Shown one piece after another: positions 4,932 through 34,058 of a stretch of DNA of 64,000 nt (its first letter is position 1; the number at the start of each line of letters is the position of its first letter). Below the pieces are notes generated by a model. The model was given only the letters and a program-made list of their open reading frames with translations, had not been told where the DNA came from and made no database searches. The stretch is from positions 1 to 64,000 of the forward strand of contig NIVC01000359.1 of NCBI GenBank assembly GCA_002269645.1. Reading direction: 5' to 3'. The stretch is from Macrostomum lignano (taxonomy: Eukaryota). A program made the position numbers and the translations under genes.

Positions 4932-5001
4932 TATTAGGAATTTGTGCCTATATTTTAGGGCTTTGTACTGTTAAATTTACAAACAAACATACAAATTGCA
5001 G

Positions 5002-16049
<11,048 letters not shown>

Positions 16050-16428
16050 AACCCCCGTTGCCGCCAGCGGAGTCAGCGGGGCTGGCCATAGACTATCGAT
16101 TTTGTGCACAGCTGTATTGGACATTGCCTACTAGCTGGATTGACCAGCTTGCCTTGCTATATAAAAGTCTACACCTGTCTCCAAGTGCGGTCAGCGCTTA
16201 TACTCTTGTGGCTTATCCTGTGATCAGCCTTGCTAGCCTCGTAGACTACAAAAGTTATTTTATCGGCTGTTAGGAAGGCTTTTAAACTGCGTGCTATACT
16301 GGTGGCCGGTGCCGATTGACTTATAAATCAATTATAATTAACTTTAACTGTTTAGAATTTGGGCTTATGAATTCAATAAAACTGCGGCATGATCCAGCAT
16401 TGTGTCAATTGTATTACAGCGTACCCTT

Positions 16429-19265: not shown

Positions 19266-19342
19266 GAATCTTGGATCGCTGTAAGGTCGATCCGCATGAG
19301 GCATAAGGCTGCCACAATGACACAATCCTGTACAATTTTCAG

Positions 19343-22300
19343 GCTCAGCAGCAGGTGCAAAATTTCTACCTGCAATTCTCCGGCCTAAGCGCCACCTCGG
19401 AGGCGTCGCTGGCCGGCCTGCCGCATTCCTACAGCGGCCTGCAGCTGGAGCTCACCGTCTGCTGCGGCAACTGTCGCCATTCCATTCGGCTGCTGGAAGC
19501 CACTCAATTCGGCATCCAAATTTCCATGTGTCTGCCGCCAGGCGGATGGGATTATTCTCTGCGCTATCGGCATCCCAGATTCCCGCATCGGACTGTCGTC
19601 ACCCGGGTCAGGCCGCTGACGCCGAGCCATCATTTTCACTTGTTGAGCACTTCGGTTAAAGACGAATCCGCGCTTCTCTGCGTCTCAGCCGCTGCCACCG
19701 ACGGTCGCTGGTCGGACTTCTGCAGCCAGCTGCTGGCCGGCTGCCGGCTGGCTGTCAACGCCGAGGGACTCGGCGAGTCGCTTCTTCACTTAGCGCTCGA
19801 CCTTCAATCGTCCTCGCCTTCGCCGTCGCCTCAATTGCCGCGCTTTCTTCGCTTGAAAGATCGCCAGCCAGCCTTGGCCACACTGTTTTTCTCCGCCATT
19901 CAGCCAAACCAACTCGGCATCCTTGCGGACACGGTCTGCAGCCTGGTCCAGCGTGCCAATATTGTTGTGGTGTTCGAAGCCAGCCATCTTGCTTCGGCAA
20001 TTCAAATTCTGACCGATAAAAATGCCAACAGGGATGCTGTCTGTCTGAAGCTGGTCCGGTTCGGCGTCGAATGGCTCGACTGGAGCGATGAAGCCTATGC
20101 GGATTCTGGATTGGCTAGCTTTGCAACCAGTGCAGCCTCAGTGCTGGCTGAGGCTGCTAATGTAACTGCCAACACTGGCAGCATTGACAATCCTTCAGCG
20201 TTATTGAATCACCTTCTGTCTCGGCTGGCCCAACGCTGGGGTCCCGTTTTGGCTGCGTACGATGCTGAGAATGCTAGCGGCATTGGCTGGGATGATGAAC
20301 CGCGATTGAGACCGCTGCGGAGTGTCTTTAATAGCCTACCTGACTTGTGAGCTCTGCTCTGTGCACTGATTAGGGAGTTAGTGCATCTCTTCACTCTGGA
20401 ACAGGCATCTCTTCACTCTGGAACAGGCATCTCTTCACTCTGGAACAGGCATCTCTTCACTCTGGAACAGGCATCTCTTCACTCTGGAACAGGCATCTTT
20501 TCACTCTGGAACAAGCATCTCTTCACTCTGGAAAAGGCATCTCTTCACTCTGGAACAGACAGCCAGTCTCGAACAGTCTGTTCCCTATTTTTCCCACCTA
20601 TTTGCAGCCGCATCCAAGTCAACTCCGGCGGTCGCTTGAACAGCTATCCAATTCTCAGCTACCGCAACCTTCTGCGCGCCTCGCTGCTCTCGCAAGTGTT
20701 CGCCCGCCACTTCCCGGATCTGTGGCGCCAAGGCGGCTCCCCAATGCAGCTTCTGCCCCGCCTGCTGTCTCTGTCCGAGCTGTGGCAGCCGCTGGACGAC
20801 TGTCTTCACTTCCGCGACCAGCTCGGAGCCGAATACGTGGATCAGCTGGCCGAGTTCTCTCGCCGTCTCGCCGATGGACTCCTGGAGCGGACGCTGAGCC
20901 TCGCCGAGTTCTGGCAACTGCGGGACAGCCTGAGTGGCCGCAGCTGGCCGGAACTGTGCCGCCTGCTGTCCTTCTTTGCCTGCCGCTCCAAGCCGCTGCC
21001 TGCTGACGCATCGGACAGAATCGGACAGCTGGACGCGCTGATGTCCGACCGACTGGCCGAGGACGAGGCCGCCTGCCGGTTGCTGCGGCGACTCGCCTTC
21101 GAGCCTCGGTGGCCAGTGGCTGGCGACCGCGGCGGTGACTGGGACCTACAGGCAGCCCTGGACGGCTGGCTGAACTCCCGGCCGAGAGTGGTCCTTGGCG
21201 AGCTGTGCAGCTTCAGCCTGCTCGAGGCTGTGACTGGCCAGCCTCTGCCAGACGGCTTGAAGCATCTTCTGGCCTCGCGTCTGTTCTTTGCTGTTGCCAG
21301 GCGACAGCTGCGGCAGGTGGGCAGCGACGGCTGCGGCGGCGGACTTCTCGGTCTTCTCACCCGAGCTCTGCGAGACTTCCAGGCCACTTTTGGAGCCGGT
21401 AAGATACTTTGAGGAAATAATAATCTCCTAGCTTTGATATAGGCTTACACCGTCTGTAGCTGGTGTTACAGTTCCATCTGTAGCTGGTGTTACAGTTCCG
21501 TCTGTAGCTGGTGTTACAGTTCCGTCTGTAGCTGGTGTTACAGTGCCGTCTGTAACTGGTGTTACAGTGCCGTCTGTAGCTGGTGTTACAGTGCCCTCTG
21601 TAGCTGGTGTTACAGTGCCCTCTGTAGCTGGTGTTACAGTGCTGTCTGTAGCTGGTGTTACAGTGCCCTCTGTAGCTGGTGTTACAGTTCCGTCTGTAGC
21701 TGGTGTTACAGTGCTGTCTGTAGCTGGTGTTACAGTGCCCTCTGTAGCTGGTGTTACAGTGCCGTCTGTAGCTGATGTTACAGTGCCGTCTGTAGCTGGT
21801 GTTACAGTGCCCTCTGTAGCTGGTGTTACAGTGCCGTCTGTAGCTGGTGTTACAGTGCCGTCTGTAGCTGGTGTTACAGTGCCCTCTGTAGCTGGTGTTA
21901 CAGTGCCCTCTGTAGCTGGTGTTACAGTGCCGTCTGTAGCTGGTGTTACAGTTCCGTCTGTAGCTGGTGTTACAGTGCCGTCTGTAGCTGGTGTTACAGT
22001 GCCGTCTGTAGCTGGTGTTACAGTGCCCTCTGTAGCTGGTGTTACAGTGCCGTCTGTAGCTGGTGTTACAGTGCCGTCTGTAGCTGGTATTATGAGAGCA
22101 TGGTAATCGTAACATCAAATCGTTGTTACCGTGTACTTTAAATTTTTATTGCACAATTATCACAAAGGCCTGCTGAACGCTCGCCTAAGCGCAAATGGCG
22201 ACGGCGACACCAACGGCGACGCCGCTGCGGAGGCCTGCGTCGAAGCTCTGGGCGGAGGCGCCGACGCAGACGCCGGCTGGTCGGCTGCTGTCGAGGAGGT

Positions 22301-25300
22301 CCGGCTGTGCAGGCTGTCGGTGGAGACGTCGCTTACGCCGCATCTGCTAACCAGGTGAACTTGCTGTTCTCGTGTGTTGAATGGGGGGGGTTAAGCTACC
22401 AGGCAGTTTTGATTTTGTCTTGAAGATTAGATTCGTTATTAAGATTTTTAGCGCGGGGGGCTTCGAAACAAAGGATTGATCTTATTTTATTTGAAATTGG
22501 AATTTAGTGGAAATTGTAGATTGGAGAATTTTATTTCGGGAATTGGGTTTTGGCAGCCGGGATTATTCTGGTTGGGATTTGGGCAATCGAAGTTATTGGA
22601 AGCAGGATTTTTAGTATCGGGATTTTGGGAATCGGGATTTTTGGAATCGGGATTTTTGGAATCGGGACTTTTGGAATTAGGATTTTTGGAATTGGGATTT
22701 TGGGAATTGAGATTTTTGGAATAGGGATTTTGGGAATTGGGATTTAGGGAATTGGGATTTAGGGAATTGGGATTTTGGAAATTGGAACTTTGGAAATTAG
22801 GATTTTTGGAATTACATGTAGGATTTTGGGAATCGGGACTTTTGGAATTGGGATTTTGGGAAAATGGGATTTCAGGATTTGGGATTTCAGGAATTGGGAT
22901 TTTGGGAATTGGGATTTGTGTATTGGGGTCTCGGAAACGGGGCTTCAAAAATGCAGTGTCTAATTTCCCAAATTTTTATCTAGTCAATTCAAGTGTTACA
23001 ATTGGTTAAGCGTCTAAAAATCAAAGGCCGTTTCTCCCGCCCCCGCTCTCACAGGCTAGCCCGCCACCGGCTCTGGCGCCAATTCGCCCGCCGCCTGTCC
23101 GACTGGCCCTGCCTGCCCGGCCCGGCCAGAGCCCCGGCCGAGGAGCTGGCCGGCAGTCCACCGGACGGCCTGACGATTCGCCAGTTCGACCGTCTGGTGG
23201 CCCGCCTGCTGCTGGGGCTCGGCTTCCTGGGCCCGGCTGGCTGGCGGCAGGCGCGCCAACTGCTGGTGCCGCCGCCGCTGCCCGCTGGCTTGGACGACTT
23301 CTTCGATAAGTGGATCAATCCGGAGGAAATGTGAGTAGCCTTAAACCTGCCTATAGTAGTATTGTCAATTGCGGGAGGGCTGCAGGCAACACCTTCCCGT
23401 AACCAGCCAGTGAGGCAATTCTGCCCATTTCTCTGACTCCTGAGAGCACACAAGCGCGCCAATACTGTACGCAGGCACTCATGCACACGCTCACACAGGG
23501 TGTACAGCGGACACTGACTTTCTAATCGTCAGGCATGGGGTTGGCCCATTTGAGCGGCTGTGAATCGCACGATAACCCACCGGTCAATTTACAAGTACTT
23601 AAGTCCCAGATTAATAAAATCGAACTAGGGATCGTACGAGGCTGCTATGCGGAAGCTGATAACTCGCTTTCCCTCGCACTTCAGCCTGGAGCCAGTCGAG
23701 CTCGAGCACAAGATCTCATTCAGACGATTGTCTCACTGCGTCAGCTGCGTACTGCTAATTGACTCGGTGAGTTTGCCAAACTCTGCTTTTGTTTTATTGG
23801 TAACCAATGTTTGTGCTTGCGTCTGATATTTAATCCCAATCAATGAAGTTGGTTTTCTCAAATTAACTACTTTTAGTGCTACCGTATTTTTCTATCAAAG
23901 TTTTTGAGCATGCACTTTAGCGAGTATTTGAGCGTGCACTTTAGCGAGTATTTGAGCGTGCACTTTAGCGAGTATTCAAGCATGCACTTTAGCGAGTATT
24001 TGAGCGTGCACTTTAGCGAGTATTTGAGCGTGCACTTTAGCGAGTATTTGAGCGAGCACTTTAGCGAGTATTTGAGCGTGCACCTTAGCGAGTATTTGGG
24101 CGTGCACTTTAGCGAGTATTTGAGCGAGCACTTTAGCGAGTATTTGAGCGTGACCTCTCATTCCATCTCCCTCAAAAAATCATTTGTACAGTGGGAGAAA
24201 AACAACACGGAGAGTCGTAGTTGCGTCTTGGAAGCAAAACTGGGCCAGTTTGGCCTGATTATGAAGACGCGGCCAGCTGCCAGCGCCAGCAGCGACAGCG
24301 GAGACGGCACGGCGCGGTTCGTGCTGCAGCTGAGCAACCTGGACGACTTGTTCCACGCCGAGCAGGACTGGAGCTTCCGCGTCCGCTGCCGTTTCGTCCT
24401 GCCGGGCGCCGAGATTTTCCCGGAGCCGCCGGCCGGCCCGCCCACCTCCTGCCGGCCGGACTGTCCGGTCCGCCGCCTGCCGCCCGGCGCATTCCAAGAC
24501 GGCGTCCTCGACCGCCTGGCGCCGTCCGACTGGCTGAGGCTGAGCCGCTCCTGCGTATGCTTTCGCCGGCTCGTTTCCTGGCGACCGCGGCTCGGCCTGC
24601 GACTTCGCCAGCTGGACTTTGCCGACAGCGGCGACTCCCTTGACGACAGCGGCGAGCGGCAGCAGGAGGAAGACGAGCTGCAGCAGTTCCTGCGCTGTCT
24701 GGGCTCTGCGTCTGACCTCCGCAGCCTGTCAGTTACCAAGGCAACGCCGCCCGGCCTGAGCCTGGCGCTGTCGCGCATCGCCCGCTGCCTGCCAGCGCTG
24801 ACGGAGCTGCGCCTGCCGGTGTGTCCGTCGCCTCTCGACTGCCTGCTGGCTGGCGACAGTCTGCGGTGCCTGACGGTGCTGCACTTGGCTGACCCCGACA
24901 GCCGGCTGCCCAGGGGCTGGCGGAGAAGCTCGCGGCAGGCCGTCAAGCGGTTCAACGACCAGGTGAGTTAGAGACGCGCTGCTGTGATACACAGTCAGAA
25001 AGATACTCGGTGTCCGTCTTGGGGTATGGACATCCTGTTAGCTACAGACATCCTGTTAGCTACAGACATCCGGTTAGCTACAGACATCCGGTTAGCTACA
25101 GACATCCTGTTAGCTACAGAAATCCGGTTAGCTACAGACATCCTGTTAGCTACAGACATCCGGTTAGCTACAGACATCCTGTTAGCTACAGACATCCTGT
25201 TAGCTACAGACATCCGGTTAGCTACAGACATCCTGTTAGCTACAGACATCCTGTTAGCTACAGACATCCGGTTAGCTACAGACATCCGGTTAGCTACAGA

Positions 25301-28300
25301 CATCCTGTTAGCTACAGACATCCTGTTAGCTACAGAAATCCGGTTAGCTACAGACATCCGGTTAGCTACAGACATCCTGTTAGCTACAGACATCCGGTTA
25401 GCTACAGACATCCTGTTAGCTACAGACATCCGGTTAGCTACAGACATCCTGTTAGCTACAGACATCCTGTTAGCTACAGAAATGCTGTTAGCTACAGACA
25501 TCCTGTTAGCTACAGACATCCTGTTAGCTACAGACATCCTGTTAGCTACAGAAATGCTGTTAGCTACAGACATCCTGTTAGCTACAGACATCCTGTTAGC
25601 TACAGACATCCTGTTATCGTGTTAGTGCTGTGCAAAAGTTCACTTTACCCACCCCAGGCCCTCTGGCTGCTCATGCGGGGCTGCGGCCGTCACCTGGAGC
25701 AGCTCAGCCTGCCAGCCCAGCAGCTGCGCAAAGCCGAGGCCTTCTGCTTCATCGCCGACTGCCGACTTCGCCAGCTAACGCTGACCAACGTGGCGAACGA
25801 GACTGTCGTGACGGCCGCAGCTGAGGCCTGCGGCTCCGGCCTGGTGTCGCTTCGGCTGACGCTGGCGAGGCAGCTTGAGCGGCTCGGCGACCGAGTCGGA
25901 TGGGAGAAGCTGGAGAAGCTGGAGGAGCTGCGCATCGAGCGGGTAACACTCCCTATCAATACACAATACCCCAAATATCCATGCCCCCAATACTCAAATG
26001 CTAAAACGCAATAATACCCCAATACCCCAATATCAATACCCCAGTATCAATACCCCAGTGCCCAAATATCAATACCCCAGTGCCCAAATATCAATACCCC
26101 AGTGCCCAAATATCAATACCCCAGTATCAATACCCCAGTGCCCAGATATCAATACCCCAGTATCAAGGCTAATACCCCAATACCCTAATACCCTAATATC
26201 AATGCCCCAATACCAATACCCCAGTATCAATACCCCACTACCCAAGAAACCCGTTCGCCTCCCCCCTCAGTCGAAGGATGTCGCACTCTTCGAGGACTGG
26301 ACTCGCTGGCCGATGATCCGAGAAGGCAGCGCCGCAGCCGCCGAAGCCTCCTGGCAGCTGAACGGCTGCAGCCTCCGGGCGCTCCATCTCGGCAGGGCCG
26401 ACCTGACCGGCGGCTGCCTTCGCCGCCTCGCCGCCCGCCTGCCGCAGCTTCGCCGACTCGACCTGCCGGACTGTGCCGGCCTCGCTAACGAAGACTTCGC
26501 CTCGCTGAAGGGCCTCGGCCGCCTGAGCTTCCTAGACGCGTCCGGCACCGCCTTTGACGGACGACAGCCGCCGCCGCCAGAGCTGCAGGTGAGCAAAAAG
26601 CTTAGGAATCAGTTTTAATAGTTTAGTTCGTGTGCTGATTTCCCGTGTCTTGATTTCCATCAGTGTGATTTCCAGTGTGATTTCCATTATTCGTGTGATT
26701 TTTATTAGTCTGATTTTCATTAGTGTGATTTCCATTAGTGTGATTTCCATTAGTGTGATTTCCCTTCCTGTGATTTCCATTAGTGTGATTTCCATTAGTG
26801 TGATTTCCATTCGTGTGATTTCCACTAGTGTGATTTCCATTAGTGTGATTTTCATTGGTGTGATTTCCCTTCGTGTGATTTCCCTTCGTGTGATTTCCCT
26901 TCGTGTGATTTACATTAGTGTGATTTTCATTAGTGTGATTTCCCTTCGTGTGATTTCCATTAGTGTGATTTCCATTAGTGTGATTTCCCTTCGTGTGATT
27001 TCCATTAGTGTGATTTTCATTAGTGTGATTTCCCTTCGTGTGATTTTCATTGGTGTGATTTCCATTAGTGTGATTTCCATTAGTGTGATTTCCATTCGTG
27101 TGATTTTCATTAGTGTGATTTCCATTCGTGTGATTTTCATTAGTGTGATTTTCATTAGTGTGATTTCCCTTCGTGTGATTTTCATTGGTGTGATTTCCAT
27201 TAGTGTGATTTTCATTGGTGTGATTTCCATTAGTGTGATTTCCATTAGTGTGATTTCCATTCGTGTGATTTCCATTCGTGTGATTTCCCTTCGTGTGATT
27301 TCCATTAGTGTGATTTCCCTTCCTGTGATTTCCATTCGTGTGATTTTTATTAGTGTGATTTTCATTAGTGTGATTTTCATTAGTGTGATTTCCCTTCGTG
27401 TGATTTCCCTTGTGTGATTTTCATTAGTGTGATTTCCCTTCGTGTGAATTCCATTCGTGTGATTTTCATTGGTGTGATTTCCATTAGTGTGATTTCCATT
27501 AGTGTGATTTCCATTAGTGTGATTTCCATTAGTGTGATTTCCCTTCGTGTGATTTTCCTTCGTGTGATTTACATTAGTGTGATTTTCATTAGTGTGATTT
27601 CCCTTCGTGTGATTTCCCTTCGTGTGATTTCCATTAGTGTGATCTCCATTAGTGTGATTTCCATTAGTGTGATTTTCAGTCACAAGTGATTTCCATTCAC
27701 AAATGATTTCCAGTCACAAGTGATTTCCAGTCACAAAAGATTCCAGTCACAAGTGATTTCCAGTCACAAATGATTTCCAGTCACAAGTGATTTCCAGTCG
27801 CACGATTTCGCAATACTTGAGCCCCTACTCAAATGCATAATAGTTCTGCTTGATCTCCGAGCGCACGCTTCATTGTTTGCCCGCTCAACCACCACCGCAG
27901 GAGCTGCTGGCAGCCCGCTGCCCGATGCTCGGCCCCGGCGGCCTGGCGCCCCTGCTGGCCAACTGTCGGCGTCTCGTCAGCCTAGACCTGACCAGGTGTC
28001 CGGGTTTGGCCAGGCCCGGCCAGCTGGCTACCGCTCTGGCCAGGCGAACCGCTCTGTCGGACGGCTTCGACCGGTTCCCGAAACTCCGCCTGCGGATCAG
28101 CGGCAGCGGCGGTGGCGGCAGCAGAAGCAGTGACTCGGAGGAGGACGAAGAAGCCGAAGCTGGGGGAGGCGATGGGGATGCGGATGCATCTCTGGCGCTG
28201 TCAGAGCGTCTTGCTCGGCTTCGCCTAGGCTTCGGAGTTGAAGTTGTCGAAACTGCCAGCCCCGCCGCTGCCTCTGTCGGTGATAACGACGACCGTGACT

Positions 28301-28563
28301 CGTCGGCGGAGGAGGAACACGACAGCGACGAATCCGAGGCAGGCAATCTATTCATGTTCGACTATGAGCACATGCCGCCCTGGCTTAGCGATGATGACGA
28401 GGACGAGTTCGATGAAGAAGAAGAGAATCTCAGCATGGACAGCGACGAGTTCTACGAACGGCAGATGCTCGAGGACATTAACGGCTTCGGCTCGTCCGAT
28501 GCGGACAGCAACAGCAGCTCCGAGGACAACGACCACGATTTGGATGATGATGATGATGATTGA
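19343..28563 (+). CDS. Large F-box/LRR protein, copy B (~1459 codons, 9 exons, no ATG in first exon)
   Basis: Exons 19343-20346, 20608-21398, 22168-22354, 23055-23330, 23685-23766, 24192-24962, 25658-25942, 26271-26588, 27901-28563. Same intron positions and phases as copy A; same F-box, LRRs and acidic tail. Confidence 0.72.
20382..20558. repeat. 22-bp minisatellite (CTCTTCACTCTGGAACAGGCAT)n, intron 1 of copy B
   Basis: About 8 units; a 1-nt-shorter homolog of the copy A 23-mer. Confidence 0.95.
21450..22088. repeat. 24-bp minisatellite (TCTGTAGCTGGTGTTACAGTGCCG)n, intron 2 of copy B
   Basis: About 26 units. Confidence 0.95.
22490..22925. repeat. Degenerate GGAATTGGGATTTT-type repeat, intron 3 of copy B
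   Basis: Low-complexity G/T/A tandem motif. Confidence 0.85.
23903..24151. repeat. 24-bp minisatellite (TTTGAGCGTGCACTTTAGCGAGTA)n, intron 5 of copy B
   Basis: About 10 units. Confidence 0.95.
25028..25618. repeat. 18-bp minisatellite (GACATCCTGTTAGCTACA)n, intron 6 of copy B
   Basis: About 32 units. Confidence 0.95.
25955..26240. repeat. Degenerate AATACCCC-type repeat, intron 7 of copy B
   Basis: Recurrent TCAATACCCCAG motif. Confidence 0.85.
26632..27800. repeat. 15-bp minisatellite (TAGTGTGATTTCCAT)n grading into a 17-bp CAGTCACAAGTGATTTC unit, intron 8 of copy B
   Basis: Direct reading. Confidence 0.95.
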
Positions 28564-28979
28564 TGATTAGAATGATGATTGATGATGATGATTGATGATT
28601 AGAATGATGATTGATGATGATGATTGATGATTAGAATGATGATTGATGATGATGATTGATGATGATTGACGATGATGATGATTGATGATGTTTATTTATA
28701 ATTGATTATGATGATTGATGATGTTTATTTATGATTGATTATGATGATTGATGATGATTGACGATGATGATGATTGATGATTGATGATGATAATGAAGAT
28801 TGGTGATGATAATGATGATTGATGATGATTGACGATGATGATGATGATGATGATGATTGATGATGATGATTATTATTATTATTGACGATGATGATGGTGA
28901 TGATTGATGGTGATTGATGATGATGATTATTATTATTATTATTATTGACGATGATGATGGTGATGATTGTTTATGATTG

Positions 28980-29011
<32 letters not shown>

Positions 29012-29075
29012 GATTGATCATGATTGATCATGATTGATCATGATGATGATGATGATTGACGATGATGATGGTTGA
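28543..29075. repeat. (GAT)n-based repeat starting in the poly-Asp tail of copy B
   Basis: Direct reading. Confidence 0.95.
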
Positions 29076-30033
29076 TTATTAAGACTTATAACCTCGACCC
29101 GTTGAAATCGTTACCGTAAACATAACTGCTTAGAAGTCGTTCCAAACAGCTCTCTAGCGACTCTTGTGACTTTCAAAGACTCAAAACGCATCTAATGCGA
29201 CTGAGAGGCGACTGTTGCAACACAAGCGCGTCACGTAAGTTGTTGAATCGTAAAAGAGTCGCGAAAGAGTCGTCCAAGAATCGTTATGTTGGCCCGCTTA
29301 ACTTTCTACTAACTCAGTAGGCTAGTTAGAGTGCAATTAGCGACGCACAAACTGAAAGTAGCTTAACTGAAGCTGGCCAAAAGTCAGCTTTTCTTTAATT
29401 AAATCACCTGTTTATTGCATTCAAATATGTGTACATGCAAATCTAATGAGATTCTTCAAAAAAGTGTCTCAAACTTGCTTTCTACTTATTTGTTCAGTAG
29501 TAAGTAAAGCGACTTATTGGCGCTAGTTGATGCAGATGGTTACCCCAGCTATTTTTTCTTTAATAAAACCAGTACACTATATTGTTTGATTTTGTAGCCA
29601 AAGTGGCCACTTTCAAAGGACCTTCGATAGCATTTATTAATTATCAATTTATTAGTTGGCATATATCCCCGCTCTTCTCTTATATTCAACTATCCTGTGT
29701 TTGCCTATTCAGCTAATAGCACCGGTTAAAACTAGATACTTTTGCTGAAAATTTTTCAGCCTTCCAATATCTTCTTTATTCGAGAGAGTGCAGCCGGAGC
29801 ATCACCGATATAAGCTTTCCCTGTATCACACTTCTGGGGCATTGTTGCCTGAGAATGAGTCTTTTATCAATTGTTTTTTTGTAATAAACTTGCTGTGGAG
29901 CAAATGCCTCTATTGTTTAATTGTTGATCTGCTGTAACTCACTGTCTTGCATTTTTTATTTGTGACTTTTTCACTGATTGGAAAACCTTTGACTAGACCC
30001 TGTATATCATCCTCGCTTATCCCTTCTCGTGTA

Positions 30034-30222
30034 GCATTCAGTGAACTTCTGCACTCTCACACAGCATCATTCAGTGAACTTCTGCACTCTCACACAGCAT
30101 CATTCAGTGAACTGCCGCACTCACACAGCATCATTCAGTGAACTGCCGCACTCTCACACAGCATCATTCAGTGAACTGCCGCACTCACACAGCATCATTC
30201 AGTGAACTGCCGCGCTCACACG
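30034..30222. repeat. 31-33-bp minisatellite just upstream of the DCTD acceptor
   Basis: About 6 units of CATTCAGTGAACT(TCT/GCC)GCACTC(TC)ACACAGCAT. Confidence 0.9.
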
Positions 30223-30239
30223 GCATTCTCCAATTCCAG

Positions 30240-30782
30240 GAGCCGGACAGCCAGAGCAGTGCCAATGGGGACACAGCCGGGCCCAGGCGTGACTACCTGA
30301 GCTGGGAGGACTACTTCATGGCCGTGGCCTGTCTGTCAGGTCAGCGCAGCAAGGACCCTGTCACCCAGGTTGGCTGCTGCATTGTGGACCAGCACAGGCG
30401 CATTGTGGCAGTTGGCTACAACGGCATGCCAACCGGTTGCCACGACGATCTGCTGCCCTGGGGCAAATCTAAAGATCCGACCTCCATGGATTCCAAGCAT
30501 TTGTACGTGTGCCACGCCGAAATGAACGCTATTGTGAATAAGAACTCAGCCACAGTTGCAGGTTGCACAATCTACGTGGCCTTGTTTCCGTGCAACGAGT
30601 GCGCCAAGTTGATAATCCAGTCAGGCATCAAGGAGGTGGTTTATCTGTCCGATAAGCATCGGACAAAGCCGGCCACCAAAGCAGCTAAGCGCATGCTGGC
30701 GAAGGCCGGCGTCTCTATGTGCCAATTTGAGTCTAAAAGAACTCAAATTACTGTAGACTTTGATGTTGACTTGATGGATTAA
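30240..30782 (+). CDS. DCTD: Deoxycytidylate (dCMP) deaminase, single coding exon beginning at an acceptor without ATG
   Basis: [37 protein letters not shown], the Zn-binding CHAE and PCNEC motifs, [11 protein letters not shown]; acceptor TTCTCCAATTCCAG ends at 30239. Confidence 0.95.
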
Positions 30783-30799
30783 AATGGCTGCTGGATTGA

Positions 30800-31145
30800 A
30801 AGGTCCTCGGCTCCCCTCTGGAGGAGTCTGGAAGAGGGTAGGTGGGGAAGAGGAGGGGAACAGACAGGTGAGAAGGAGAGGTGCGGAAGAGACAAGGGAA
30901 GGGAGATGTGGAGGAGGAGAGACACATGGGGAAGAATCGGAAGAAGAGACGGGTGTGGAAGAGACAGATGGGGAAGAGGCAGGTAGGGAAGAGACAGATG
31001 GGGAAGAGGCAGGTAGGGAAGAGACAGATGGGGAAGAGGCAGGTAGGGAAGAGACAGATGGGGAAGAGGCAGGTAGGGAAGAGACAGATGGGGAAGAGGC
31101 AGGTAGGGAAGAGACAGATGGGGAAGAGGCAGGTGAGGAAGAGAG
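30800..31145. repeat. Polypurine 30-bp minisatellite (GAAGAGACAGATGGGGAAGAGGCAGGTAGG)n
   Basis: About 6 near-perfect units at 30958-31135 with a degenerate 5' flank. Confidence 0.9.
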
Positions 31146-31562
31146 CTAGAACTATCGGATTTCATTTTTAGCATAGTGGATTTTCAATTTTTCTCGGTGC
31201 TTGAATTTATTATGAAAATTTTTTGGTGGAGCGCTTTTACCCTTTTTATTATTCATATTTTGATGCACAAGTTGGAGCCAATTAAGTTAGGCTTCAATAT
31301 TCTACGAGTATCAGGTTGTTAGAAATCACGTACCTGTAATCTGGTGATTTGCTTGGTTTTGGATTTTTCTTAAGCCAACAATGAATTGTTTAGTCGTGGC
31401 GGATTTTACTGCAGTAAATTTACGTAACTCACTACTACTTTAAAGCGTTTCTTGACTTTCTCGCTTGTTTTTATTGAAAAATAAAACTGTATTCTCATTT
31501 GCTTTGTTTTATTGATTTTTCAATTTAAAACAATCTCAATTGTTTTTACTTTACCGACAGTT

Positions 31563-32095
31563 GACCCTAGACCTGAGACAGACCCTAGATCTGAGACACA
31601 TACCCTAGACTTGAAACACATACCCTAGATCTGAGACACATACCCTAGATCTGAGACAGACCCTAGATCTGAGACACATACCCTAGACTTGAGACACATA
31701 CCCTATATCTGAGATACATACCCTAGATCTGAGACAGACCCTAGATCTGAGACACATACCCTAGACTTGAAACACATACCCTAGATCTGAGACACATACC
31801 CTAGATCTGAGACAGACCCTAGATCTGAGACACATACCCTAGACTTGAGACACATACCCTATATCTGAGATACATACCCTAGATCTGAGACAGACCCTAG
31901 ATCTGAGACAGACAATAGATCTGAGACACAGACCCTAGATCTGAGACAGACCCTAGACCTGAGACACAAACCCCTAGACCTGAGACACAAATTCTTAGAC
32001 CTGAGACACAGACCCCTAGACCTGAGACACAGACCCCTAGACCTGAGACACACATTCTTAGACCTGAGACACAGTTCTCTAGACCTTAGACACAT
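31563..32095. repeat. 18-21-bp minisatellite (CCCTAGATCTGAGACACATA)n
   Basis: Tandem units ending ~30 bp before the NEPRO-like ATG. Confidence 0.92.
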
Positions 32096-32124
32096 ACAGA
32101 ATTTCAACTAAATGAATTTCATTC

Positions 32125-34058
<1,934 letters not shown>

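What the first reader, a model, noticed from the sequence alone, without database searches (positions are those of the whole stretch)
30226..30782. dCMP deaminase has no start codon, but a spliced-leader AUG would complete it exactly
Seen: the frame opens at acceptor TTCTCCAATTCCAG|GAG CCG (phase 0). The first in-frame ATG lies inside the conserved YFMAVA motif, and I found no compatible upstream coding exon in 28563-30239. Established: flatworm spliced leaders end in a conserved AUG that can act as the initiator Met. Inference: SL-AUG + [22 protein letters not shown]... gives a 181-aa protein, the typical size of animal DCTD, so translation would depend on trans-splicing.
Basis: partly seen in the sequence, partly recalled or inferred. 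Interest (0 to 1): 0.75.

Follow-up and report, generated by a model that had tools for sequence, protein, structure and literature searches.

The report
Flatworm dCMP deaminase started by spliced-leader AUG
This is the dCMP deaminase gene of the flatworm Macrostomum lignano, which has no start codon of its own and almost certainly gets one from the AUG at the end of the trans-spliced leader, a mechanism already described in flatworms, so it is a correct but fairly ordinary find.

Summary
Window 30240-30782 is an intact, intronless dCMP deaminase ORF (Pfam PF00383, 7e-27; human DCTD 2W4L, 1.2e-61). It opens directly after TTCTCCAATTCCAG. Its first genomic in-frame ATG is codon 27, inside YFMAVA and downstream of invariant residues.

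The window is Macrostomum lignano. Two public paralogous gene models are 99% identical and both are 5'-partial with no upstream exon. One starts exactly at the homologous acceptor.

The published M. lignano spliced leader is 35 nt and ends in ATG. The acceptor fits the published trans-splice motif [T/C]TNCAG. A published table flags the M. lignano DCTD genes as TRANSSPLICED and neoblast-enriched.

The only upstream ATG...GTAAGT exon candidate is frameshifted in one paralog.

Leader AUG plus this ORF gives a 181-aa protein in a good initiation context (GCAAUGG). I saw no junction reads, and translation from the leader AUG is inferred.

The mechanism has been known since Cheng et al. 2006 in Schistosoma, so this is a new member of a known kind, of low to moderate interest.

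In passing: the next gene downstream carries ATG in two copies and a CAG acceptor at the same three bases in the third.

The parts
30226..30239 (+). Pyrimidine-rich tract and AG acceptor (TTCTCCAATTCCAG). Proposed spliced-leader trans-splice acceptor, with the cut between 30239 and 30240.
   Evidence: Sequence. TTCCAG fits the published trans-splice motif [T/C]TNCAG, which occurs only twice in 28566-30400. It is conserved in L001 and L002, and the NCBI model in L002 starts at the first base after it.
30240..30782 (+). Codons 2-181 of dCMP deaminase (DCTD) in a single exon. The initiator codon is absent from the genome.
   Evidence: Translation. PF00383 7e-27. Human DCTD 2W4L 1.2e-61. 99% identity to the M. 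lignano proteins P0001 and P0121.
30783..30785 (+). Stop codon TAA.
30318..30320 (+). First genomic in-frame ATG (Met of YFMAVA). It lies too far in to be the natural start.
   Evidence: Invariant R16 and W22 and near-invariant Y19, Y25 and F26 lie upstream of it. These residues align with residues 5-16 of the solved human enzyme.
30513..30521 (+). His-Ala-Glu catalytic and zinc-binding motif (CHAEMNA).
   Evidence: Invariant H92, A93 and E94 in alignment A1. Read from the sequence.
30588..30602 (+). Pro-Cys-x-x-Cys zinc-binding motif (PCNEC).
   Evidence: Invariant P117, C118, N119, E120 and C121 in A1.
30035..30221 (+). 33-nt minisatellite in the outron, ending 18 nt before the acceptor. Not coding.
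   Evidence: TRF gives 5.8 copies here, 4.8 in L001 and 58.8 in L002. A leader AUG joined at its internal AGs gives only short ORFs.
29071..30034 (+). AT-rich intergenic or outron sequence (GC 0.38), with AATAAA at 29562 and 29883. These may be the poly(A) signals of the upstream gene.
   Evidence: 96-97% identical in L001 and L002.
29446..29499 (+). Rejected candidate upstream coding exon (MRFFKKVSQTCFLLICSV|GTAAGT).
   Evidence: The only ATG...GT[AG]AG phase-0 candidate. It is frameshifted by a 1-nt A insertion in L002 and is absent from both public gene models.
30786..31500 (+). Probable 3' UTR, with AATAAA at 31480. Contains a 30-nt minisatellite at 30943-31144.
   Evidence: The extent is inferred.

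Best explanation
The locus is one of at least three near-identical copies of the Macrostomum lignano dCMP deaminase (DCTD) gene. The genome encodes codons 2-181 in one exon that begins directly after a trans-splice acceptor.

The pre-mRNA comes either from the gene's own promoter or from a polycistronic transcript shared with the upstream gene. It is trans-spliced at 30239|30240 to the 35-nt spliced leader CGGTCTCTTACTGCGAAGACTCAATTTATTGCATG. The leader's terminal AUG then sits in frame, in the context GCA-AUG-G, directly before GAG CCG GAC. It serves as the initiator and gives MEPDSQSS..., 181 aa.

RNA that is not trans-spliced has no usable in-frame AUG, so making the enzyme depends on trans-splicing.

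Shown: the ORF, the missing ATG, the acceptor, the species, the leader sequence (literature) and the 5'-partial public models. Indirect: trans-splicing of this gene, from a published flag and a gene-model boundary. Inferred: initiation at the leader AUG.
For: The ORF and acceptor read as described.

The species is M. lignano. P0001 (PAA63238.1, 'partial') and P0121 are 99% identical.

The NCBI model in L002 starts at the first base after the homologous CCAG, and neither model has an upstream exon.

The leader ends in ATG and the trans-splice acceptor motif is [T/C]TNCAG (PMC8629364). The site reads TTCCAG, and that motif occurs only twice in 1.8 kb.

The M. lignano DCTD genes Mlig008437.g9 and g17 are flagged TRANSSPLICED and stringent-neoblast (PMC5816591 supplement 2).

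The annotation pipeline trims the leader and then calls ORFs with TransDecoder. That explains the 'partial' label (PMC5730564).

Invariant R16 and W22 lie upstream of the first genomic Met, and the N-terminal length matches homologs.

N-terminal codons 1-15 have GC3 of 0.80, against outron GC of 0.38.

The three copies keep the ORF intact. Window versus L002 shows 3 synonymous changes and 1 conservative change, while the flanks are 2-3.5% diverged and the minisatellite ranges from 5 to 59 copies.

The mechanism is established in Schistosoma: the leader AUG is in frame in 28% of trans-spliced mRNAs and required by more than 40 cDNAs (Cheng et al. 2006, as cited in PMC9851317). It is also acknowledged for Macrostomum (PMC10468722).
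Against: I saw no leader-junction read, cDNA or peptide. The exact protein MEPDSQ... is not in the 15-billion-protein collection.

The link between the published v3 gene names (Mlig008437.g9 and g17) and this locus rests on their being the only M. lignano DCTD cluster found. It is not a coordinate match.

The NCBI model in L001 starts 9 nt downstream of the acceptor, at a site not preceded by AG. Model boundaries are therefore not always exact.

Three other in-frame AG sites exist (exon starts at 30243, 30255 and 30309), so the exact junction is not proven.

A leader AUG is in frame one time in three by chance.
Confidence: 0.85

Rival explanations
1. A cis-spliced upstream exon supplies the ATG, for example 29446-29499 (MRFFKKVSQTCFLLICSV) joined from its GTAAGT donor to the 30240 acceptor. 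The public models would then simply be 5'-incomplete.
For: One phase-0 ATG...GTAAGT candidate exists and is identical in L001. In parasitic flatworms, acceptors are often shared between cis- and trans-splicing (PMC12582326).
Against: A 1-nt insertion in L002 puts the donor out of phase, while the DCTD ORF itself is conserved. The peptide is hydrophobic and unlike any DCTD N-terminus. Neither RNA-seq-guided model has such an exon. The gene is flagged TRANSSPLICED.
Confidence: 0.05
2. Translation starts at the first genomic AUG (Met27, 30318) and gives a 154-aa N-terminally truncated enzyme. The leader AUG would be skipped.
For: It is the first AUG encoded in the gene. Leader AUGs that are out of frame in other mRNAs must sometimes be bypassed.
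Against: This start would remove invariant R16 and W22 and near-invariant Y19, Y25 and F26, which align with structured residues of human DCTD. The leader AUG lies upstream, in frame, with G at -3 and G at +4. The 26 upstream codons are stop-free, GC3-rich and conserved in all copies.
Confidence: 0.04
3. Near-cognate (GTG or CTG) initiation occurs inside the outron on RNA that is not trans-spliced, reading through the minisatellite into the DCTD frame.
For: The frame is open from 30111 and holds in-frame GTG (30138, 30171) and CTG (30207) codons.
Against: That stretch is a minisatellite with 5 to 59 copies among paralogs, so it is not under coding constraint. It is removed if the RNA is trans-spliced.
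Confidence: 0.02
4. The locus is a non-functional or untranslated copy (a retrocopy or pseudogene), and its missing start codon simply reflects decay.
For: The gene is intronless and lacks an ATG. The L001 copy carries Y25H at a near-invariant position.
Against: All three copies have intact ORFs with all catalytic and zinc-binding residues. Substitutions are mostly synonymous. No other M. lignano DCTD appeared among the best 120 hits listed, the only ones inspected. The DCTD genes are reported as expressed and enriched in proliferating cells.
Confidence: 0.03

Closest known systems
[quoted passage not shown]
   Same: The leader ends in AUG. The acceptor sits at codon 2 of a conserved ORF. There is no genomic in-frame AUG upstream of the conserved domain. 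The leader AUG is in frame with no intervening stop.
   Different: The species is the free-living macrostomorph M. lignano rather than Schistosoma mansoni. The gene is DCTD. Use of the AUG is inferred here, not shown by translation assays. All three homeologous copies share the dependence.
Animal deoxycytidylate deaminase (DCTD; human structure 2W4L)
   Same: 59-66% identity to animal DCTDs. The HAE and PCxxC zinc motifs are present, the length is similar (181 vs 178 aa), and the N-terminal RxDYLxWxxYFM is conserved.
   Different: The start codon is not encoded in the gene. The CDS is intronless. The variable N-terminal tail is 15 residues, compared with about 4 in human.
Spliced-leader trans-spliced genes of M. 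lignano in general (Wudarski 2017; Ustyantsev and Berezikov 2021)
   Same: It has a [T/C]TNCAG acceptor, is a conserved gene enriched in stem cells, and may have an operon-like position downstream of another gene.
   Different: Most trans-spliced genes carry their own AUG downstream of the leader. This one does not.

Membership tests
mRNAs dependent on the spliced-leader AUG (flatworm slORF class) | The organism has a spliced leader whose last three bases are AUG. | tested here: met
   The species is identified as M. lignano. The published leader is CGGTCTCTTACTGCGAAGACTCAATTTATTGCATG (PMC8629364). The leader gene itself is not in the window.
mRNAs dependent on the spliced-leader AUG (flatworm slORF class) | The mRNA is trans-spliced to the leader at an acceptor at the 5' edge of the ORF. 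| tested here: met
   The evidence is indirect. M. lignano DCTD genes are flagged TRANSSPLICED. The NCBI model in L002 begins at the first base after the acceptor. TTCCAG fits the published motif. No junction reads were seen.
mRNAs dependent on the spliced-leader AUG (flatworm slORF class) | The leader AUG is in frame with the conserved ORF, with no stop between. | tested here: met
   ATG joined to 30240 onward gives a 181-codon ORF.
mRNAs dependent on the spliced-leader AUG (flatworm slORF class) | No genomic in-frame AUG can give the full conserved protein. | tested here: met
   The first in-frame ATG is codon 27, past invariant residues. There is no ATG in the upstream open stretch. The only consensus-donor upstream exon candidate is frameshifted in L002.
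mRNAs dependent on the spliced-leader AUG (flatworm slORF class) | Translation actually initiates at the leader AUG. | not testable with these tools
   This needs ribosome profiling, N-terminal proteomics or a reporter assay.
dCMP deaminase (DCTD, PF00383) | Match to the cytidine/deoxycytidylate deaminase zinc-binding domain above the curated cut-off. | tested here: met
   PF00383 scores 93.7 bits against a cut-off of 25.
dCMP deaminase (DCTD, PF00383) | Catalytic H-A-E and P-C-x-x-C zinc ligands are present. | tested here: met
   H92, A93, E94 and P117, C118, C121 are invariant in A1.
dCMP deaminase (DCTD, PF00383) | Full-length similarity to an experimentally characterised DCTD. | tested here: met
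   Human DCTD 2W4L scores E 1.2e-61, aligning query 15-175 to chain 5-164.
dCMP deaminase (DCTD, PF00383) | dCMP to dUMP deamination activity. | not testable with these tools
   An enzyme assay is needed.

The most novel reading that the evidence does not exclude
In M. lignano, genomic start codons and leader-supplied start codons may be freely and recently interchangeable. All three DCTD copies have no genomic AUG at all. In the very next gene, the same three bases are ATG in two copies (window 32125-32127 and L002) and a CAG trans-splice acceptor in the third (L001), where the public model starts right after it.

If this is general, many of the '5'-partial' gene models of this genome are really complete. 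Trans-splicing would then be an obligatory gate for translation of a set of genes enriched in stem cells.
Probability: 0.4. Interest if true: 0.45.

Novelty: new member of a known kind. Interest (0 to 1): 0.25.

Why it matters
For annotation: the public M. lignano models of this gene are labelled 'partial', although adding the leader AUG most likely completes the protein. The same is probably true of many other trans-spliced genes in this genome.

For biology: a nucleotide-metabolism enzyme enriched in proliferating stem cells would be translatable only after trans-splicing. M. lignano is the one flatworm with routine transgenesis, so the requirement could be tested directly.

It does not change what is known about the mechanism itself.

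Tried and rejected
1. Exact look-up of MEPDSQ... (two variants) and of three alternative N-termini in the 15-billion-protein collection. None is present, so no transcript-derived ORF was available.

2. Search for the leader sequence in the window and the loci, in case an SL RNA gene or a cis-encoded leader sat nearby. No match with up to 3 mismatches.

3. Idea that the downstream gene's start (AATTTCATTCATG) is a relic of a retroposed leader. A Smith-Waterman scan of the leader against the whole window showed this site is not among the best chance matches, so I rejected it.

4. The upstream exon candidate 29446-29499. Rejected because of the frameshift in L002.

5. Supplements of PMC5730564 and PMC8629364 searched for the gene name. 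Nothing was held. 'Mlig017547' occurs in no full text.

6. Cheng et al. 2006 itself is not in the library. Its results are cited second-hand from PMC9851317, PMC12582326 and PMC5832876.

7. Rfam reports a weak tRNA at 9214-9283 (36.4 bits). ARAGORN does not confirm it.

8. Pfam on the neighbouring ORFs gave no family.

Full report
**What is in the sequence**

Window 30226-30239 reads TTCTCCAATTCCAG. GAG CCG GAC follows from 30240. That frame runs without a stop to GAT at 30780-30782, followed by TAA at 30783-30785.

Upstream, the frame stays open only to a stop at 30108-30110, and those 43 codons contain no ATG. The first in-frame ATG is 30318-30320, codon 27, the Met of YFMAVA. No ATG occurs in any frame between 29905 and 30239.

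**What the ORF encodes**

The 180 encoded residues match the cytidine/deoxycytidylate deaminase zinc-binding domain PF00383 (93.7 bits, cut-off 25). They also match human DCTD structure 2W4L (E 1.2e-61, query 15-175 on chain 5-164 of 178). Identity to DCTDs from fish, arthropods, molluscs and cnidarians is 59-66%.

In a 23-sequence alignment, the HAE and PCNEC zinc motifs are invariant. So are R16 and W22, and Y19, Y25 and F26 are nearly so. All five of those residues lie upstream of the first genomic Met.

Homologs start 8 to 45 residues before that conserved Arg, and this ORF has 15. Nothing conserved is missing except the initiator codon. A start at Met27 would remove conserved, structured residues.

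**Which organism**

The best hit is NCBI PAA63238.1, 'hypothetical protein BOX15_Mlig017547g2, partial [Macrostomum lignano]', at 99% identity. Its 90% cluster holds a second M. lignano protein, P0121.

I fetched both loci: L001 (contig NIVC01001861) and L002 (contig NIVC01001325), from assembly GCA_002269645.1. They are collinear with the window over about 20 kb, at roughly 91-99% identity outside the tandem-repeat arrays. The window is therefore a third homeologous or duplicated copy, as expected for this neopolyploid genome.

**Comparison of the three copies**

- The window and L001 coding sequences differ at one base (Y25H in L001).
- The window and L002 differ at four bases: three synonymous, and one E-to-D change at the first codon.
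- The acceptor is conserved in all three copies.
- The 33-nt minisatellite just upstream has 5.8 copies in the window, 4.8 in L001 and 58.8 in L002.

Sequence constraint therefore begins at the acceptor. The first 15 codons have GC3 of 0.80, like the rest of the CDS (0.66) and unlike the outron (GC 0.38).

**Public gene models**

Both NCBI models are single-exon and 5'-partial. In L002 the CDS begins at the first base after CCAG. In L001 it begins 9 nt further in, at a position not preceded by AG, so model boundaries are not perfectly reliable.

The annotation was built by trimming spliced-leader sequence from RNA-seq reads and mapping them. Transcripts were then cut at those signals (TBONE), and ORFs were called with TransDecoder (PMC5730564). 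A gene whose AUG comes from the leader must appear '5'-partial' under that procedure.

**Trans-splicing evidence from the literature**

- The M. lignano spliced leader is the 35-mer CGGTCTCTTACTGCGAAGACTCAATTTATTGCATG (PMC8629364).
- The top motif at its trans-splice acceptors is [T/C]TNCAG. The site here reads TTCCAG, and the motif occurs only twice in 28566-30400.
- In the supplementary expression table of Grudniewska et al. 2018, the M. lignano DCTD genes Mlig008437.g9 and g17 are both flagged TRANSSPLICED. They are classed as irradiation-sensitive, S/G2/M and 'Neoblast, stringent' (PMC5816591).
- Those names come from a later transcriptome version. Equating them with this gene family rests on there being a single M. 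lignano DCTD cluster among the hits.

**The resulting mRNA**

Joining the leader to 30240 gives ...UUGC-AUG-GAG-CCG-GAC..., with G at -3 and G at +4. The ORF is 181 codons: [23 protein letters not shown]....

Other AG sites that would also be in frame have exon starts at 30243, 30255 and 30309. The AGs inside the minisatellite give ORFs of 1 to 36 codons.

**Rivals**

I enumerated every ATG...|GT phase-0 exon candidate between the upstream stop and the acceptor. There are 38. Most lie in the GAT microsatellite and have poor donors. One has a consensus donor: 29446-29499, MRFFKKVSQTCFLLICSV|GTAAGT. In L002 an extra A in its A-run shifts the donor out of phase, while the DCTD ORF stays intact. 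It is also in neither public model.

The other rivals are weaker still:
- Internal initiation at Met27 would delete invariant residues.
- Near-cognate initiation in the outron would read through a copy-number-variable repeat.
- A pseudogene is hard to square with three intact, mostly synonymously diverged copies and reported expression in proliferating cells.

**Comparison with what is known**

Use of the flatworm leader's terminal AUG as initiator was described by Cheng et al. 2006. [quoted passage not shown] I found no paper naming DCTD as such a case. This is therefore a new member of a known kind, and a specialist would not be surprised.

**Limits**

I saw no junction read, cDNA or peptide. 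The exact predicted protein is not in the large protein collection. Initiation at the leader AUG is inferred.

Whether the gene has its own promoter is open. It may instead be the downstream member of an operon with the upstream ORF, which ends at 28563. AATAAA lies at 29562 and 29883. The distance is about 1.68 kb, of which about 0.7 kb is simple repeat.

**Side observation**

The next gene downstream starts with a genomic ATG in the window (32125-32127, CATT-CATG-CAA) and in L002 (CATT-GATG-CAG). In L001 the same three bases are CAG (CATT-GCAG|CAA), and the public CDS starts immediately after them, 5'-partial.

A start codon and a trans-splice acceptor thus occupy the same position in copies that differ by about 1-4% in the directly flanking sequence. 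This suggests that genomic and leader-supplied AUGs are readily exchanged. I tested whether this site is a relic of a retroposed leader and rejected that.

Noticed in passing
window 32120-32130; L001 11716-11730; L002 11566-11582: The start of the next gene downstream (274-aa first ORF in the window, no Pfam match) differs between copies. The window has CATT-CATG-CAA and L002 has CATT-GATG-CAG, both with a genomic ATG. L001 has CATT-GCAG|CAA: the ATG is replaced by a CAG acceptor that fits [T/C]TNCAG, and the NCBI CDS starts right after it with no ATG. An ATG and a trans-splice acceptor therefore occupy the same three bases in near-identical paralogs.
   Followed up: partly
window 30035-30221; L001 9818-9973; L002 8085-9982: A 33-nt minisatellite (CATTCAGTGAACTGCCGCACTCTCACACAGCAT) ends 18 nt before the DCTD acceptor. 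It has 5.8, 4.8 and 58.8 copies in the three paralogs. Each unit carries two AG dinucleotides that could act as decoy acceptors, but these give only very short leader-AUG ORFs.
   Followed up: yes
window 28543-29070: A GAT-based microsatellite of about 530 bp begins inside the last codons of the upstream ORF. It forms that ORF's poly-Asp tail (DDDDDD*) and continues past the stop. It is much shorter in L001 (about 200 bp).
   Followed up: no
window 27850-28563; L001 about 7900-8657: An acidic C-terminal ORF (237 codons, no Pfam hit) lies just upstream of DCTD. No NCBI gene model covers it in L001 or L002, where the upstream model ends about 2.7 kb (L001) or more (L002) before it. It resembles an ORF at window 15462-16046 (ELLA.RC...LVSLDLT.CP.LARPG).
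   Followed up: partly
window about 5000-16050 and about 19340-28563: This looks like a tandem duplication of a large multi-exon gene. Matching ORF starts are at 5002/19343 (..QVQ.FYL.FSGL..), 11482/24330 (identical [16 protein letters not shown]...) and 15462/27850.
   Followed up: no
L001 10064-10066 (window 30312-30314): The L001 paralog has His in place of the near-invariant Tyr25 (EDHFMAVA vs EDYFMAVA). This may be a slightly impaired copy or an assembly error.
   Followed up: no
L001 9992-10001: The NCBI CDS of PAA63238.1 starts 9 nt downstream of the acceptor, at a position not preceded by AG. The paralog model in L002 starts exactly at the acceptor. Some 5' ends of the public models are therefore imprecise.
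   Followed up: partly
window 30943-31144 and 31564-32097: Two more minisatellites lie between DCTD and the next gene, one of 30 nt (6.7 copies) and one of 20/78 nt (27 copies). The first is in the probable DCTD 3' UTR.
   Followed up: no
window 9214-9283: Rfam reports a tRNA-like match (36.4 bits, E 5e-4), but ARAGORN finds no tRNA. It may be a degenerate tRNA or a tRNA-derived repeat.
   Followed up: partly
window 6300-8700, minus strand: A long array of 23-nt-periodic repeats gives open frames of the form [23 protein letters not shown]. It showed up as many overlapping ORFs in the acceptor-motif scan.
   Followed up: no
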